Assembly: GCF_964204865.1 (NCBI RefSeq)
Contig: NC_135250.1
Coordinates: 17,422,001-17,486,000 of the forward strand
Length of the DNA stretch: 64,000 nt
Source of the DNA: Styela clava
Taxonomy: Eukaryota
Direction of reading: 5' to 3'
Each line of letters begins with the position of its first letter. The stretch's first letter is position 1. Made by a program: the position numbers and the translations under genes. Below are positions 5,434 to 35,372 of the stretch, piece by piece. The notes below the pieces were generated by a model that did no database searches, was not told where the DNA came from, and worked only from the letters and a program-made list of their open reading frames with translations.

Positions 5434-5935
5434 TCAAACACAAAAATAAAAAATATAGAATTACACAAACACGGAAGCCGGTGTCGAATCCTTATTCTAT
5501 TGGCAAAAAGTTAAAAAAAATATATTAATTTTTAACGTCATGCAGTAATATTTATTAGTTTATCAATTAAAAAAACAAGTCTGTAAGATTCGAATCACCA
5601 GTAAATTATACTCCAGGTGAAACTATCAAAATATTAAAAAAGAAAATAAAAAACTCAGACTTGACTCGAACCTCAGATTACAACTGGTCCTTTATACCGA
5701 TTACCGATCGTAACGACATGTTTGAGATGGTTATGTTGTGATGAACATTGAAAGAATAGATAGTAATAATTCAGGAGTGAATTTTATTTTTGATTTTCAC
5801 TTAACAGATTAATGTATTTCACCAACGTGCATTCTCCGTGTTGAGTTATAAAAATCAGCAAATCAGCAAGTGTAGATCAATAGTTGTAAAAACAGAAAAC
5901 CTATAAAAAATGTATGCTAATCAATATCGCAATAT
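5434..5935 (+). pseudogene. Decayed fifth copy of the MSMB-like gene family
   Basis: Three collinear remnants: exon 2-like SNTKIK/YRITQTRKPVSNPYSIGK (~5434-5520), exon 3-like LSIKKTSL/RFESPVNY...YNWSFIPIT...CC (~5560-5741), and exon 4-like behind an intact acceptor ttaacag|5808: LMYFTNVHSPC*VIKISK/CRSIVVKTENL*. Contains stops, an 8-bp duplication (atcagcaa) and lost Cys/Trp residues. Confidence 0.8.
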
Positions 5936-8397: not shown

Positions 8398-9460
8398 ATG
8401 GTATGCTTTCATTTAATTCAATTATTATTATTATCTTGGGATCTACAAACAAACATTTGAACATTGTGTTGCAGATGCATTTACATATTGCAACAATATT
8501 CTTGGTAGCATGTACGATTTCATGCATCACTGCTGACTGTTACATAGACAATGGTTGTCCAAATACAAAAACGAAGAAAAAAGAATATAGAATCGGGCAA
8601 AGATGGAGACCAAACTCAGATCCATGTTATACATGTAAATGTGTAAAATCAAAAGAATATGTGGTGAGTTATATTTATAAAGATTGAATATGTTACTTAT
8701 CAATGAAACGATATAACGGATTTTTTTATTTAATATTTTACAGTTAGCATGCCTTGAAGCCATAAATCAGAAACCGAAACTGTCGTTTAAAAAAAGTGAA
8801 TTGATTGCAACTTTTGAATCAACGATAAGATACGCTGCGGATGAAGAAATGGAAATAAATGAAAGAGAAGTTAAAACGAAACAATGCAGTCCAATTCGAG
8901 CACCAGTCTACAACTTGTCTACCAGCAAGTTTGAATCAATTACATACAAAACAGTTTATTATTTCTACACAAGAAAAGAATCAAGATGTTGCAGTCGGTT
9001 AGTGCTATTCGTATATTTAAGATAACGACCATGTTGATTATTGTACACTATACTTCCTCTTCTGACAACTCCATGAAACAAGGTACTTGCCACAAAGCGA
9101 AGCTGCTGAATTTGGTAAGCATACAATGATAATGAATTCAATAATATAATATTAGCCTATAGCCCAATATCCCATTCGGTATACCCATCCTTTAGTTGTA
9201 GTAAATGTAAATCAGCGTATTGTAACCTATACATTAGCCTTATTGAAAATAACAAATACGCCAGGATATATCCGTTACGGATATCACATAGTGTAAATAT
9301 TCCTTATTGTCATTGTTTCCTTAATTTTTTCAGATTTTCGTATTTCACTAACGTTCACGCGTCCTGTAAAGTCGTTAAAATCGGCAGGTGTAGGTCAAAA
9401 CTTGTCAAAAAGGAAAATCCAAAAGAAAGATGCAACATGCCAATGGCATTGATTGGCTGA
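8398..9460 (+). CDS. Beta-microseminoprotein (MSMB/PSP94)-like secreted Cys-rich protein, paralog 1; join(8398..8400,8475..8663,8744..8997,9334..9460), ~190 aa
   Basis: Canonical splice sites (ATG|gtatgc, ttgcag|ATG, GTG|gtgagt, ttacag|TTA, CG|gttagt, tttcag|A) give an open frame: (M)MHLHIATIFLVACTISCITA-DCYIDNGCPNTKTKKKEYRIGQRWRPNSDPCYTCKCVKSKEYV|LACLEAINQKPKLSFKKSELIATFESTIRYAADEEMEINEREVKTKQCSPIRAPVYNLSTSKFESITYKTVYYFYTRKESRCCSR|FSYFTNVHASCKVVKIGRCRSKLVKKENPKERCNMPMALIG*. Signal peptide, W..CxxCxC, CC and C-x7-C-x13-C with VxKxNP as in MSMB. Same structure in three paralogs. Confidence 0.88.
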
Positions 9461-9475
9461 AGCGATTCTTGATTT

Positions 9476-10070
9476 TCAATCACCATCAACTACCAAATTC
9501 AACGAGGCAATATACATTTAGCTGTCATAATCACTGCCAGAATCTTCGTATTATTTCATGTCTAATAACAAATTACTGGTGAATGTGTCTTATGTTCCAA
9601 GAAAAGTGGACAAAAATGTTGACACTTTTTCATCTGTCGGGCATGTTTTCGCACGCAATAAGTATATTTCTATATCTTTTCAAGTTAATGCAACAGTGCT
9701 ATTCTTTGTTCTTCTTTATTATTTTGTGTTACTATTATAGCCTGTTTTTTTTTGGTTTGGTGTTTAGGTAGGATCAATCACCATCAACTACCAAATTCAA
9801 CGAGGCAATATACATTTAGCTGTCATAATCACTGCCAGAATCTTCGTATTATTTCATGTCTAATAACAAATTACTGGTGAATGTGTCTTATGTTCCAAGA
9901 AAAGTGGACAAAAATGTTGACACTTTTTCATCTGTCGGGCATGTTTTCGCACGCAATAAGTATATTTCTATATCTTTTCAAGTTAATGCAACAGTGCTAT
10001 TCTTTGTTCTTCTTTATTATTTTGTGTTACTATTATAGCCTGTTTTTTTTTGGTTTGGTGTTTAGGTAGG
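9476..10070. repeat. Apparently exact 298-bp tandem duplication in the 3' UTR of paralog 1
   Basis: 9476-9772 matches 9774-10070; the ORF track gives identical translations 298 bp apart. Confidence 0.92.
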
Positions 10071-12063: not shown

Positions 12064-13267
12064 ATGAATTCTGCATTTTTAATCGTTTTGATCATTGCAT
12101 GTTGTATTGGATGCGTCGTTTCTGTTTGTTATCGGGAAGTAGGATGTGTAAACACGAGGAAAAAATATAGAGATTATAAAATCGGACAAAGATGGAAATC
12201 ATCATCGGATCCATGTTATTCTTGCAAATGTATTAAAAGAAAGAAATTCGCGGTAAGGGCTTAGTTTTTATTGCGTATACATGATAATATGAACACAGTA
12301 GCATAAAGTTTAAAATATTGTATTATGTATAATATGTTTCCATGTCAATGTAGTTAGTGTTCGCTACAATATTTTAATTTATGCACTACGAATGCGGATT
12401 GTTCAAAAACGTTTTCTTATTAATTTTGCAGATGGCATGTCTCGAGCCTGTGAATAAACGAACGGAATTATCAGTCAGAAAAAGTTTATTCACTGGACGA
12501 TTTGAATCATCCGTAAACTACAATTTATCTGAAGACAGAAGAATTTCCGAACTTGAAACAATGGAATGCCCACCAACGCCAATACCAGTCTACAATTGGA
12601 CAACTGGAACGTTTGAACCAACCAAGATAGTTTATTACTACTATATCAGAAAAGTATCGAGATGTTGTAGTAGGTCAGTTACTTTATTGAACTAACAATT
12701 TTGAATTTTTTAATAAAAAGTGTTAACAAAGGTTGAAAAATAAGAAAAGTGGGGTGTATATGTTTCAACGAATAAACAGTTTTTTTATGGGCTATACATA
12801 TTTTGTTATACGAAACAAATATAATAAAGATTTTGGACCTCCTAAAGTATGCGCACCAAGATGGCGCACAACCTGAACTCAGGTTGTGCACCAGGTTAGG
12901 GTTCAGGTTATGCGACATCTTGGTGCGCATACTTCAAGAGTACCAAGATTTTTTTATGAGATAAGTAACGCCAAAATTTTTGATCCTTTAAAGTTTATAG
13001 TCTAAATAATGCAGTTTATGTGAGTGCGTTTTATACGCGACTTGCATCTAGTATTCAAAATTCGATGCTATTCTTATCTGAACTAGACTATTCAAAATTA
13101 ATCGAAACAATGATACTGCTTGGAACTAAAAATGTTTATATATTTATAGGTTTACCAAGTTTTCCTACGTGCACCCTTCATGCAAGGTTGTTAAAATCAG
13201 CAGATGCCAATCGAAAGCGGTAATGAAGAATAATCCGCGTAAAATATGCGGCAAGAGGATGTCTTGA
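12064..13267 (+). CDS. MSMB/PSP94-like secreted Cys-rich protein, paralog 2; join(12064..12252,12432..12673,13150..13267); probable upstream exon ending at 11415 (ATG AAG|gtaagt)
   Basis: MNSAFLIVLIIACCIGCVVS-VCYREVGCVNTRKKYRDYKIGQRWKSSSDPCYSCKCIKRKKFA|MACLEPVNKRTELSVRKSLFTGRFESSVNYNLSEDRRISELETMECPPTPIPVYNWTTGTFEPTKIVYYYYIRKVSRCCSR|FTKFSYVHPSCKVVKISRCQSKAVMKNNPRKICGKRMS*. Intron positions and phases (0, 2) are identical to the paralogs. The stop is 3 codons earlier than the family stop at 13274-13276. Confidence 0.87.
12833..12946. mobile_element. Palindromic MITE in the last intron of paralog 2
   Basis: Inverted arms AAGTATGCGCACCAAGATG / CATCTTGGTGCGCATACTT with an internal GGTTAGGGTT motif. 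Confidence 0.75.
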
Positions 13268-21902: not shown

Positions 21903-23080
21903 ATGCACTCTGTTCTTTCTACCGCATTAATTGTTGGAGTTTTGATCGGTTACGTTGCTGCAGCATGCTACAGAGAAGTCGGCTGTTCAAGCACATGGGG
22001 AAAAGGAAGAACTTACAGAATTGGACAAAGGTGGAAACCAAAATCGGACCCATGCTACGTCTGCAAGTGTGTGAAAGCAAAGAAAATTGTGGTAAGGAGA
22101 AAAGTATGAATATACAGCCCCATTTTAGTTGTGTCGTTTTGATATGTACCAATTAGGAAAGCGCAAATTTGACAACGGCTGGTAAAACTTCATAATTTAC
22201 TTTCAATCAATACATGAACAAAAACATTATTTAATCTTGGGAATATCTTAAGAAACGTTTGTTTGTCAATTGCTAATATTTAAGTTGTTTCTCTACAGCT
22301 AAAGTGTCAAGTTGCAATTGACGAACATCCAAAAACTGTCAAAAAGAGCCTATTATCTGCACGTTTTGAATCCATGTCCGTGAATGCCAAAAACGAAGAT
22401 ATAAAAATTACAAGAAAAGAAGCAAAAACCATAGAATGTCCTCCAATTCGTGCGCCGATCTACAACTGGGCTACTGGTACTTTTGAACCAATCACATACA
22501 AGAATGTCTACTATTATTACATACGAAGAGTGTCAAGTTGCTGTAGCAGGTTAGCATTTTTTTGTATAAAATGTTTGTAAAATAGTTTCCCCATTACCTA
22601 TATGTTAGGTATATACCAAAAACATATGTTATTGAGATACCAAGAGTGTTCTGAAGCTTTTTCGCATAATAATGTTTGTACTTCGGGCTGTACAAAATAG
22701 CTCAGGATCATTGGTGCTTTTAAGATGAGGCGCTTGGTAGTTTTACTTTTATTTTTATTTACAACTCAGTGATATTGCTTCTGAATTTAGCATGTGTATG
22801 TCAATGTAACATAACATTTATAAAATATGGTTCCAGATGGGAATTGTATACAAATTAATCAAAGTGTTATTAAAATCTTACGCCAGATCTTACGATACAA
22901 TGTGGTCAAATTCAAAAATGTAGTTGGGAATAACTTATTCCTATATTTTTCAGGTTTATCGGCTACACAAGTGTCCACCCAGCCTGTAAAGTCGTCAAAA
23001 TCAGCAAGTGCAGATCAAAAGCTGTCAGAAAAGATAATCCACAAGAAAGATGCAATCTTTCCATGCGCTACGTCGGGTGA
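21903..23080 (+). CDS. MSMB/PSP94-like secreted Cys-rich protein, paralog 3; join(21903..22091,22299..22549,22954..23080); non-coding exon 1 ends at 21825
   Basis: MHSVLSTALIVGVLIGYVAA-ACYREVGCSSTWGKGRTYRIGQRWKPKSDPCYVCKCVKAKKIV|LKCQVAIDEHPKTVKKSLLSARFESMSVNAKNEDIKITRKEAKTIECPPIRAPIYNWATGTFEPITYKNVYYYYIRRVSSCCSR|FIGYTSVHPACKVVKISKCRSKAVRKDNPQERCNLSMRYVG*. All splice sites are GT-AG. AATAAA at 23313. Confidence 0.88.
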
Positions 23081-34406: not shown

Positions 34407-35372
34407 ATGACTAACGGATTAACAATCACCGCCTGCATTGTATGTTTAATCGTATGTGTAACTGCTGATTGCTTCAGAGAAATTGGATGCTCTCGCAAGG
34501 GTAAAGAATTTGAAATAGGAAAAAGATGGCGATCAAGAGAACATCAATGTCATAGCTGCAAGTGCGTGGAAGCCAAGAAATATGTGGTAGGTTCCAATAT
34601 CTTTGAATAGAAAGAACGTACTCTTTTTTTAGACTTTTTTTACATGACACTATATTAATATATATAATTTCTGATTCAAATCCTAAACTTGTTTCATTTT
34701 ATACAGCTGGAATGTCAAGTTGCCATCGAGAAGAAAATTAAAGATTCTGTGAAGAAAAGTAAATTATCGGCGCACTTTGACACTTCGATCCAGTATGCAG
34801 AAGATGAAGATGTTAAAATTACGGAAAAAGAAGCAAAAGACAAAAAATGTCCCCCTACCAAAGCACCGACATATAACTGGGCTACCGGTACTTTCGACCC
34901 CATCACATACAAGACAGTATATTATTACTACAAAAGAAAAGAATCCAGATGTTGCAGCCGGTTAGTATTTTTTCAGACATTATTTCAGCTTGAGAATAAT
35001 AACCACCATAGATACCTAACTAATTATCTACTAACATGCCTACTTTTCAAAAAAGGTGAAATCCCACTGTGCGCCTAAACATTACGAATCCGATTTTAGA
35101 AATATTCCTCGATATTCACAACGAGAATAGTATTTTATGTAGCACATTATAGAGCAAGGTAGCAAGCTATATTGTGTTTCCATTAGTCTCAACAGAGTTA
35201 CAAATAACACGACTAAATTTTAATGAATGTTTGTTTACGTTACAGTTCCGTTCATTTTACCAACATTCATCCTTCGTGTAAAGTTGTCAAGGTCAACAAA
35301 TGCAGATCAAAAGTTGTAAAAAAATCGAATCCAAATGAAAGATGCTTCATGTCGATGTCTTTCAAAGGCTGA
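34407..35372 (+). CDS. MSMB/PSP94-like secreted Cys-rich protein, paralog 4; join(34407..34586,34707..34960,35246..35372); non-coding exon 1 ends at 34222
   Basis: MTNGLTITACIVCLIVCVTA-DCFREIGCSRKGKEFEIGKRWRSREHQCHSCKCVEAKKYV|LECQVAIEKKIKDSVKKSKLSAHFDTSIQYAEDEDVKITEKEAKDKKCPPTKAPTYNWATGTFDPITYKTVYYYYKRKESRCCSR|SVHFTNIHPSCKVVKVNKCRSKVVKKSNPNERCFMSMSFKG*. AATAAA at 35799. Confidence 0.88.

What the first reader, a model, noticed from the sequence alone, without database searches (positions are those of the whole stretch)
8744..8997. An ~80-residue, two-Cys module inserted into a short loop of the MSMB fold
Seen: paralog 1 has 88 residues between CxxCxC and CC (similar in the others), against 6 in human MSMB. 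The insert is conserved in all paralogs (C...S.KKS....F(E/D)...I...E.....C.P...P.YN..T..F(E/D)....VYY(Y/F)Y.R..S.CC) and carries exactly two extra Cys that could form a private disulfide. It is flanked by a Lys-rich strand-like segment (VKSKEYVLAC) and a Tyr-rich one (KTVYYFYTRKESR). Inference: these may pair as a long beta-ribbon stalk projecting a variable knob domain, loosely analogous to bovine ultralong CDR-H3, giving a diversifiable binding surface on an MSMB scaffold. I do not know of a described MSMB with such an insert. Equivalent exons: 12432-12673, 22299-22549, 34707-34960.
Basis: partly seen in the sequence, partly recalled or inferred. Interest (0 to 1): 0.78.

Follow-up and report, generated by a model that had tools for sequence, protein, structure and literature searches.

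The report
Sea-squirt MSMB proteins with big insert
A sea squirt (Styela clava) has about twenty genes for small secreted proteins of the beta-microseminoprotein (MSMB) kind whose tight hairpin turn is replaced by a conserved, expressed 70-100-residue piece with two extra cysteines; this variant appears undescribed and its function is unknown.

Summary
Window 8744-8997 is exon 2 of a three-exon secreted-protein gene. Its splice joints appear in cDNA-like contigs of three runs and not in a DNA run. It encodes 84 residues and brings the distance between CxxCxC and CC to 88, against 6 in human or chicken MSMB.

The organism is Styela clava. Pfam does not call the insert-bearing proteins PSP94 (0 of 9). 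However, both flanks align colinearly with an insert-less S. clava paralog, P0017, which passes the PSP94 cut-off and hits all four MSMB chains of the PDB.

All 18 insert exons aligned hold exactly C, C and CC. The genome has at least 22 insert-bearing loci.

The insert matches no known domain. It is not hypervariable. The loop between the two extra Cys diverges like the scaffold. The 33 residues before CC are the most conserved part of the protein.

Verdict: a real, new variant of the MSMB family. The fold of the insert and its function are unknown.

The parts
8475..8663 (+). G1 exon 1: start codon, signal peptide, and the N-terminal MSMB-like part up to 7 residues after CxxCxC
   Evidence: ATG, and GTGAGT donor at 8664. 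The joint 8663>8744 is seen in cDNA-like contigs. Weak VWC/PSP94-type N-part.
8744..8997 (+). G1 exon 2 (the finding): 84 codons plus 2 bases. It holds extra Cys 1, a 44-residue loop, extra Cys 2, a 33-residue conserved Tyr-rich segment, then the scaffold CC.
9334..9460 (+). G1 exon 3: the C-terminal MSMB-like domain (3 Cys) and the TGA stop
12064..12252 (+). G2 exon 1
12432..12673 (+). G2 exon 2 (insert exon, 80 codons plus 2 bases)
13150..13267 (+). G2 exon 3. Its stop comes 3 codons earlier than in the paralogs; all Cys are kept.
21903..22091 (+). G3 exon 1 (the gene equals NCBI XP_039270618.1 = P0001)
22299..22549 (+). G3 exon 2 (insert exon, 83 codons plus 2 bases)
22954..23080 (+). G3 exon 3
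34407..34586 (+). G4 exon 1
34707..34960 (+). G4 exon 2 (insert exon, 84 codons plus 2 bases). Its transcripts show up as loose ends of cDNA-like contigs.
35246..35372 (+). G4 exon 3
5812..5900 (+). Degenerate exon-3-like remnant with a stop (pseudogene fragment)
   Evidence: G000:C1:17427812-17427862, 1 TGA.

Best explanation
The exon encodes an integral, constrained part of a secreted protein of the beta-microseminoprotein (MSMB/PSP94) family of the ascidian Styela clava.

In ordinary MSMBs the strand carrying CxxCxC and the strand carrying CC form a tight hairpin of about 6 residues in the N-terminal Greek-key domain. In this subfamily that hairpin is opened and holds 71-102 residues. The layout is:
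- 9 residues;
- extra Cys 1;
- a charged loop of 28-59 residues that takes all the large length changes and carries a conserved (S/T)VKKS motif and an acidic E-[IV]-E-[IL]...EA motif;
- extra Cys 2, usually followed by Pro;
- a length-conserved, aromatic-rich segment of about 33 residues that runs into CC.

Shown here: the exon is spliced into mRNA and cannot be skipped in frame. It is under purifying selection as strong as on the scaffold. The two extra Cys always come together. The flanks are homologous to a Pfam-positive, insert-less MSMB paralog of the same genome. The subfamily has at least 22 loci in S. clava and relatives in at least one other, unidentified organism.

Inferred, not shown: the ten scaffold Cys keep the five MSMB disulfides and the two extra Cys bond to each other, closing the loop. 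The insert folds, probably beta-rich, as an added sub-domain projecting from the hairpin and gives an extra binding face.

The likeliest role, by analogy with MSMBs, is a secreted binding or defence protein of mucosal or reproductive fluids. No experiment or tissue record seen here supports any particular role.
For: Gene model and expression:
- ATG, GT..AG and TGA are in place for all 4 window genes.
- Joints 8663>8744 and 8997>9334 appear in 3 of 3 cDNA-like runs and in 0 of 1 DNA run. No exon-1-to-exon-3 joint was seen.
- Exon 2 is 254 bases long, so it cannot be skipped in frame.
- NCBI's models agree.

MSMB kinship:
- The insert-less S. clava protein P0017 scores 25.5 bits on PF05825 against a cut-off of 22, E 2e-5. 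It hits 4 of 4 MSMB chains of the PDB at E 0.9-2.1e-3.
- The family profile against P0017 by hhalign gives E 6.8e-5 and 2.2e-5 for the C-part and E 0.0067 for the N-part. The two parts are colinear.
- The exon-3 profile found P0017's exon in the 377-Mb genome at E 0.007.
- The top two PDB hits of the exon-3 profile are human MSMB, at E 0.08.
- In the ESM Atlas the three nearest clusters are all PSP94 (score 0.88, 172-174 of 256 features shared). MSMB-size models align to both ends of P0017's relative P0001 with TM 0.49.
- The family's intron 2 and P0017's only coding intron share place and phase.
- P0017 lacks both the first Cys and one C of CC, which are disulfide partners in chicken MSMB3.

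Insert properties:
- 12 Cys are invariant in 8 of 8 full-length proteins.
- 18 of 18 insert exons have exactly C, C, CC.
- Extra Cys 1 is the 10th residue after CxxCxC, and Cys 2 to CC is 33 residues, in 8 of 8.
- Non-synonymous difference (pN) is 0.244, 0.238 and 0.242 in exons 1, 2 and 3.
- The Cys 2-to-CC segment is more conserved than the scaffold, p 0.004.

Range:
- 14 exon-2 hits plus 8 more distant loci with an insert exon.
- Four of the five Logan proteins were tested against the genome. They are only 43-50% identical to it, so they come from another species.
Against: - Pfam does not recognise the insert-bearing proteins as PSP94: 0 of 9 at E up to 10. Exon by exon the count is 0 of 7 translations.
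- A genome scan with PF05825 did not pick these loci.
- The family profile finds no MSMB chain in the PDB at E up to 10.
- The direct links are individually modest: hhalign probabilities of 63-76% for the C-part and only 5.7% for the N-part. The Atlas score of 0.88 is below the tool's own 0.9 line and the TM of 0.49 is below 0.5.
- No structure could be predicted. The Atlas's own model of P0001 is mediocre (pLDDT 0.67, pTM 0.44). So the fold of the insert, the ribbon and the extra disulfide are all inference.
- The loop is 33-42% charged and could be partly disordered.
- The runs that show splicing are labelled RNA only as a guess, and their tissue is unknown.
- The function rests on analogy alone.
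Confidence: 0.8

Rival explanations
1. One reading: the insert is a long beta-ribbon stalk carrying a variable knob, similar to a bovine ultralong CDR-H3. The gene family would then be a diversified recognition repertoire.
For: - The insertion point is a beta-hairpin tip (PMC8167871, passages read).
- The flanks are length-invariant: 9 residues going up and about 33 coming down.
- Length changes fall in the loop between the two Cys, which ranges from 28 to 59 residues.
- There is a roughly 10-column patch with the highest pN, 0.40.
- There are at least 22 loci in tandem clusters, with pI from 4.3 to 9.8.
Against: - The loop is not more divergent than the scaffold: 0.53 against 0.48, p 0.36.
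- pN is equal in the three exons.
- Even the closest pair (L004/L005) has pN 0.09 in exon 2 against pS 0.51 pooled over the three exons.
- The loop itself holds conserved motifs.
- Synonymous sites are saturated, so positive selection at single sites could not be tested.
- There is no structural model.
Confidence: 0.2
2. It is not an MSMB but a VWC or single-VWC type domain with long loops, and the extra Cys complete the VWC ten-Cys pattern.
For: - Weak PF00093 matches to the N-part: E 0.034, 14.9 bits and E 0.049.
- An SVWC cluster ranks 13th in the Atlas at 0.81, and VWC proteins appear among the low-TM structure rows.
- Fibronectin type I chains appear at E 2-4.
Against: - The scores are far below the VWC cut-off of 27.6 and cover only profile positions 4-32 of 57.
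- The C-terminal half aligns with PSP94 proteins, not with VWC.
- There is one Cys, not two, between Cys 5 and CC, and 13 residues rather than 2-4 after CC. The VWC spacing used for this comparison is recalled, not taken from a call.
- The nearest same-genome relative passes PSP94.
Confidence: 0.05
3. The loop is a processing or spacer segment. Cleavage at the conserved dibasic KK inside the disulfide-closed loop would yield a two-chain protein. Alternatively the charged loop is simply disordered.
For: - (S/T)VKKS or a close variant is conserved in the 11 closer members.
- The loop is 33-42% charged with negative hydropathy.
- The Atlas model of the whole protein reaches only pLDDT 0.67.
Against: - KK is a poor convertase site (recalled). 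It is not kept in the distant members, for example L020, L021, L022, L024 and L026.
- The loop is constrained as strongly as the scaffold.
- It shows a strand-like alternation of hydrophobicity, though this comes from a crude periodicity script.
- No protein-level data exist.
Confidence: 0.1
4. It is an annotation artefact: exon 2 is not really part of the mature message, or these genes are pseudogenes.
For: None beyond the absence of a Pfam call and the 'uncharacterized' labels.
Against: - Spliced contigs carry exon 2 in three runs.
- The frames are open and the splice sites canonical in 4 of 4 window genes.
- Purifying selection is evident.
- The exon is conserved in another species.
Confidence: 0.02

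Closest known systems
Beta-microseminoprotein / PSP94 family (Pfam PF05825; human 3IX0 and 2IZ3, porcine 1XHH and 2IZ4, chicken MSMB3)
   Same: Secreted, with a signal peptide. Same order of ten Cys (C, C, CxxCxC, CC, C, C, C). Very similar spacing in the C-terminal domain, including a basic-Asp/Asn-Pro stretch before the last Cys. The C-terminus ends in Gly, as in chicken MSMB3. Tandem multigene clusters and fast sequence change are also reported for vertebrate MSMBs (PMC3268785, passages read).
   Different: There are 71-102 residues instead of about 6 between CxxCxC and CC. There are two additional Cys, making 12. The mature protein is about 165 residues instead of about 90. It falls below the Pfam threshold. 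There is an extra intron at the 5' edge of the insert.
Styela clava LOC144422265 (P0017, XP_077968392.1), an insert-less MSMB paralog on another chromosome
   Same: Same genome. Both halves align colinearly. The intron two residues after the CC-position Cys has the same place and phase. The C-terminus has the same ...VG form.
   Different: 111 aa, with 10 residues in the hairpin and no insert exon. It has only 8 Cys, having lost the first Cys and one C of CC. It passes PF05825.
[quoted passage not shown]
   Same: A length increase in the exon that, in vertebrates, encodes the CxxCxC...CC region.
   Different: Only that one sentence was seen. Its size, place and Cys content are not given, and the supplements are closed.
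VWC / single-VWC domains (PF00093, PF15430) and fibronectin type I modules
   Same: The N-terminal sub-domain motif (aromatic, Gly, Trp, CxxCxC) gives weak matches.
   Different: The C-terminal half and the Cys count and spacing do not fit. The scores are below the cut-offs.
Bovine ultralong CDR-H3 stalk-and-knob
   Same: A disulfide-containing module displayed at the tip of a beta-hairpin of a small beta scaffold.
   Different: The diversity here is germline paralogs, not somatic. The module is not hypervariable. The geometry is untested.

Membership tests
MSMB / PSP94 (PF05825) | Scores at or above Pfam's gathering cut-off of 22 bits | tested here: not met
   0 of 9 insert-bearing database proteins hit PF05825 even at E up to 10. 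0 of 7 exon translations hit it. The insert-less paralog P0017 meets it with 25.5 bits. An 88-residue interruption splits the 94-position model in two.
MSMB / PSP94 (PF05825) | Ten conserved Cys in the order C, C, CxxCxC, CC, C, C, C | tested here: met
   All ten, plus two extra, are invariant in 8 of 8 full-length proteins. The window genes have 5+4+3 Cys. The pattern was compared with chicken MSMB3 and human MSMB.
MSMB / PSP94 (PF05825) | Significant, colinear sequence similarity of both domains to accepted members | tested here: met
   hhalign against P0017: C-part E 6.8e-5 and 2.2e-5, N-part E 0.0067. Genome-wide exon-3 profile hit on P0017 at E 0.007. Human MSMB is the top PDB hit of the exon-3 profile, but only at E 0.08.
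MSMB / PSP94 (PF05825) | Two-domain all-beta fold: a Greek-key N-domain and a beta-sheet C-domain | tested here: inconclusive
   The Atlas's own model of P0001 aligns to MSMB-size models with TM 0.49 over 89-92 residues spanning residues 6-186. That model has pLDDT 0.67.
MSMB / PSP94 (PF05825) | Five specific disulfides, including the inter-domain one | not testable with these tools
   Indirect only. P0017 has lost exactly the two Cys that are partners in chicken MSMB3, C2 and C43.
MSMB / PSP94 (PF05825) | Short hairpin between CxxCxC and CC, and a small size of about 90 residues | tested here: not met
   The gap is 71-102 residues in 18 of 18. The mature protein is about 160-196 residues.
VWC (PF00093) | Scores at or above the gathering cut-off of 27.6 bits over the whole domain | tested here: not met
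   14.9 and 14.4 bits, covering profile positions 4-32 of 57 only.
VWC (PF00093) | Two Cys between the fifth Cys and CC, and CC followed closely by another Cys (pattern recalled) | tested here: not met
   There is one Cys between, and 13 residues from CC to the next Cys.

The most novel reading that the evidence does not exclude
The insert is an autonomously folded, disulfide-closed sub-domain of a new fold, born inside a hairpin of the MSMB scaffold together with a new intron. The 22 or more paralogs differ in loop length (28-59 residues) and charge (pI 4.3-9.8). On this reading they form a germline-encoded repertoire of secreted recognition or antimicrobial proteins in ascidians, in which a miniprotein scaffold has been turned into a two-module binder.
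Probability: 0.15. Interest if true: 0.75.

Novelty: new variant of a known kind. Interest (0 to 1): 0.45.

Why it matters
MSMBs are treated as about 10-kDa, ten-Cys miniproteins (PMC8167871, PMC3268785). Here a chordate lineage has roughly doubled the protein by growing a conserved, Cys-stapled module out of one hairpin, and has then expanded that form to about twenty genes.

If the module folds on its own, this is a clean natural case of domain birth inside a disulfide-rich scaffold. An insert-less paralog in the same genome serves as a control.

It also gives a name and a testable framework to a set of 'uncharacterized' S. clava proteins. And it shows why family models miss them: the insert splits the Pfam model.

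It does not, as it stands, reveal a new mechanism or answer a long-standing question.

Tried and rejected
- Pfam on the insert. One of four insert exons gave TPR_HPS5_insect at E 0.0045, 17.3 bits against a cut-off of 27. The other three gave nothing, so I took it as chance.
- PDB sequence searches with insert profiles. The 4-sequence profile gave only E 0.47-0.95 noise. The 18-sequence profile gave nothing at E up to 10.
- ESM Atlas on the insert part alone. The best feature score was 0.76 and all structure rows had TM 0.36 or lower with unrelated proteins.
- Internal duplication. hhalign of the insert against the exon-1 and exon-3 profiles gave probabilities of 0.4% and 0.2%. Rejected.
- Whole-genome PF05825 scan. 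It returned only six sub-threshold VWC-like exons elsewhere.
- The search for homologous proteins with P0001 and with the family alignment. It returned only 2 and 4 S. clava proteins.
- dN/dS. Synonymous sites are saturated (pS 0.5-0.86), so only pN and amino-acid divergence were compared. L008 was left out of the three-exon comparison because its exon 1 lay outside the fetched locus.
- Alignment A5. It leaves out L010 and L025, which are near-identical to L009 and L024. It also leaves out two exon-2 hits that were never fetched (C14:7042566 and C1:6253012).
- Secondary structure. I had only a crude hydrophobic-periodicity script, which I give little weight.
- Organism of the five Logan proteins. 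P0004 was not tested against the genome.
- Literature. Searches of the held library found no paper on a tunicate MSMB with an insert and none naming these LOC numbers. For PMC8167871 and PMC3268785 I saw passages only. Other papers I saw as listings only. The supplements of PMC3268785 (sequence sources, Ciona homologues) were closed and may bear on whether Ciona genes carry an insert.
- Joined spliced model. The joined model of the window genes was never built or searched. Full-length work used proteins that the tools returned (P0001 and others).
Full report
**What is at the coordinates**

The window is AT-rich eukaryotic DNA, about 33% G+C. Translating 8744-8997 in frame 0 gives an open 84-residue stretch. 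It starts two residues before a Cys and ends in CC-Ser.

Upstream lies an exon with a start codon, a hydrophobic signal peptide and a Cys-rich part that ends 7 residues after CxxCxC (8475-8663). Downstream lies an exon with three more Cys and a stop (9334-9460).

A tblastn of these three pieces against the window shows four such genes on the + strand, plus one degenerate exon-3 remnant with a stop near 5812-5900. All four genes have ATG, GT..AG introns, TGA, open exons and 5+4+3 Cys after the signal peptide. Their CxxCxC-to-CC gaps are 88, 84, 87 and 88 residues.

**Is it expressed as read?**

Contigs of three runs from one study lie on the exons only. Those runs are labelled RNA by guess. The contigs join 8663 to 8744 and 8997 to 9334 with GT..AG ends. 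A DNA-type run from a second study carries the whole stretch unspliced.

One run also shows a minor alternative donor at 9113. No contig joins exon 1 directly to exon 3. Because exon 2 is 254 bases long, skipping it would shift the frame.

Loose ends of other contigs read into the G4 paralog, so G4 is transcribed too. The tissue of these runs is unknown to me.

NCBI's own prediction for G3 is identical to the three-exon product (P0001, XP_039270618.1, 'uncharacterized protein', Styela clava). All full-length analyses used proteins that the tools returned.

**Is the scaffold an MSMB?**

Family models do not say so. Pfam gives no PSP94 match for any of 9 insert-bearing database proteins at E up to 10, and only a sub-threshold VWC match for one of them. 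Single exons give the same result. A PF05825 scan of the genome picks other, VWC-like exons. The family profile finds no MSMB chain in the PDB.

The link comes from elsewhere. A profile of exon 3 from 11 paralogs, run over the 377-Mb genome, hit a locus on another contig at E 0.007. That locus is a two-exon gene, and NCBI's product for it is P0017 (111 aa). P0017 passes PF05825 with 25.5 bits against a cut-off of 22. It also matches all four MSMB chains in the PDB at E about 1e-3 over both domains.

Profile comparison of the insert-bearing family with P0017 aligns the C-terminal domain at E 6.8e-5 and 2.2e-5. It aligns the N-terminal part, through CxxCxC, at E 0.0067. The two parts are in the same order, with the insert between them.

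The exon-3 profile's two best PDB hits are human MSMB. The E-value is only 0.08, but the alignment runs from the fourth-last to the last Cys.

In the ESM Atlas the three nearest clusters to P0001 are all PSP94 families, with score 0.88 and 172-174 shared features. MSMB-size models align to both ends of its stored model at TM 0.49. The tool itself rates such values as leads.

Two further points fit MSMB:
- The family's intron 2 and P0017's only coding intron lie two residues after the CC-position Cys, in the same phase.
- P0017 has lost both the first Cys and one C of CC. These two are partners in the chicken MSMB3 crystal structure, C2-C43 (PMC8167871, passages read).

I therefore file the proteins as divergent MSMB-family members. 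The family's formal model threshold is not met.

**The insert itself**

In chicken MSMB3 the CxxCxC strand (beta 5) and the CC strand (beta 6) are neighbours in the Greek-key sheet, linked by six residues and a disulfide. Human MSMB also has six residues there. P0017 has ten.

The insert-bearing genes have 71-102 residues there. Across 18 insert exons every one has exactly four Cys: one near the start, one in the middle, and CC at the end. Those 18 are 4 from the window, 7 closer loci and 7 distant loci. Two near-duplicates and two unfetched hits were left out.

In 8 of 8 full-length proteins the first extra Cys is the tenth residue after CxxCxC, and the second is followed by exactly 33 residues before CC. 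This set includes one protein from another species. The stretch between the two extra Cys varies from 40 to 56 residues. Across all 18 exons it varies from 28 to 59 residues, and the segment before CC from 25 to 37.

The loop is 33-42% charged. The segment before CC is 15-24% aromatic.

The two extra Cys never occur singly, and the ten scaffold Cys are all retained. So a private disulfide that closes the loop is the simplest reading. It is still an inference.

**Is the insert a known domain, or a copy of part of the scaffold?**

I found no sign of either.
- Pfam gives one sub-threshold hit in one of four exons, taken as chance.
- PDB profiles give nothing.
- The Atlas on the insert part gives a score of 0.76 and TM of 0.36 or lower.
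- Comparison with the family's own exon-1 and exon-3 profiles gives nothing.

A profile of the four window inserts was run against 1.84 billion representative proteins. It found 13 proteins at E up to 1e-3:
- six S. clava proteins, all labelled 'uncharacterized';
- five unnamed proteins from Logan assemblies;
- two long proteins from a slime mould and an oomycete that match only a short charged stretch, which I discount.

Four of the five Logan proteins were tested against the S. clava genome. Their best matches are 43-50% identical, each to a different paralog type. So the insert-bearing form exists in at least one other organism, and its subtypes seem older than that split.

**Is the insert a variable knob?**

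The data say no, at least at paralog level. For seven genes with all three exons in hand, the non-synonymous difference is 0.244, 0.238 and 0.242 in exons 1, 2 and 3. Synonymous sites are saturated at about 0.72.

Mean pairwise amino-acid difference:

| Region | Mean difference | Permutation p against scaffold |
|---|---|---|
| Non-Cys scaffold columns | 0.48 | n/a |
| Loop between the extra Cys | 0.53 | 0.36 |
| 33 residues before CC | 0.30 | 0.004 |

So part of the insert is the best-conserved part of the protein. A patch of about 10 columns in the loop is the most variable (pN 0.40), and it is where distant paralogs carry indels. Saturation of dS rules out a real test for positive selection here.

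**Family size and gene structure**

The exon-2 profile finds 14 places in the genome. The exon-3 profile finds 26. These are the same 14, 8 more distant loci, the insert-less P0017, and 3 fragments.

On inspection each of the 8 distant loci has an exon 2 with the same phases and the same four Cys.

In every locus examined, intron 1 lies 7 residues after CxxCxC in phase 0, at the 5' edge of the insert. P0017 has no intron there. The insert and intron 1 may therefore have arisen together. This is speculation.

**What it most likely does**

Shown: it is a secreted-type protein with an MSMB-like scaffold and a constrained, expressed added module. The family is large and tandemly duplicated, and pI ranges from 4.3 to 9.8. 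The window cluster is strongly basic, with pI about 9-10.

Inferred: the module folds against, or extends, the beta 5-beta 6 ribbon and adds a binding face.

Known MSMBs bind CRISP-type proteins and some are antimicrobial (introduction of PMC8167871, passages read). By analogy I expect a binding or defence role in secretions. Nothing here tests that.

**Comparison with print**

PMC3268785 states that almost all family members share ten Cys and lists homologues in Ciona spp. [quoted passage not shown] That is the only hint of length growth that I found.

Eight searches of the held library gave no paper describing an insert-bearing tunicate MSMB or naming these loci. Closed supplements and papers outside the library could change this.

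**Verdict**

The MSMB assignment and the 'two private Cys' idea are supported. The 'diversifiable knob' is not supported by the divergence data. The ribbon geometry remains untested.

It is a new variant of a known family and is of moderate interest.

Noticed in passing
window 9476-10070: A perfect 2-copy tandem repeat of 298 bases (100% identical) starts 16 bases after the G1 stop codon, so it probably lies in the 3' UTR. It is either a very recent duplication or an assembly artefact.
   Followed up: partly
window 8998-9113: One cDNA-like run shows an alternative donor at 9113 that keeps 116 bases of intron 2. Read in frame, it would end the protein a few residues after CC, without the C-terminal domain.
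   Followed up: no
window 5812-5900: An exon-3-like remnant with an in-frame stop lies upstream of G1. It is a decayed fifth copy.
   Followed up: partly
window 13150-13267: G2 ends three codons earlier than its paralogs (TGA before the usual ...VG end). Its insert has two small deletions. All 12 Cys are kept.
   Followed up: partly
L027 (G000:C4:7839607-7840285) and L027:637-843: The insert-less MSMB gene P0017 has 8 Cys, having lost one disulfide pair as a unit. An exon-3-like piece about 2 kb upstream suggests a second insert-less paralog.
   Followed up: partly
L024/L025 (G000:C4:3.50-3.52 Mb) and L026 (G000:C1:24.51 Mb): This is a distant sub-group with a short insert exon of 68 residues and a different loop motif.
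   Followed up: partly
window 8470-8477: The G1 start codon follows directly on a CAG that could be an acceptor, so an untranslated upstream exon is possible. The cDNA-like contigs start only at 8577 and do not settle it.
   Followed up: no
L013-L018 (various contigs of G000): The best genome matches to the PSP94 model outside this family are VWC-like exons (W...CxxCxC...C). This illustrates the overlap between the N-terminal motifs of MSMB and VWC.
   Followed up: no
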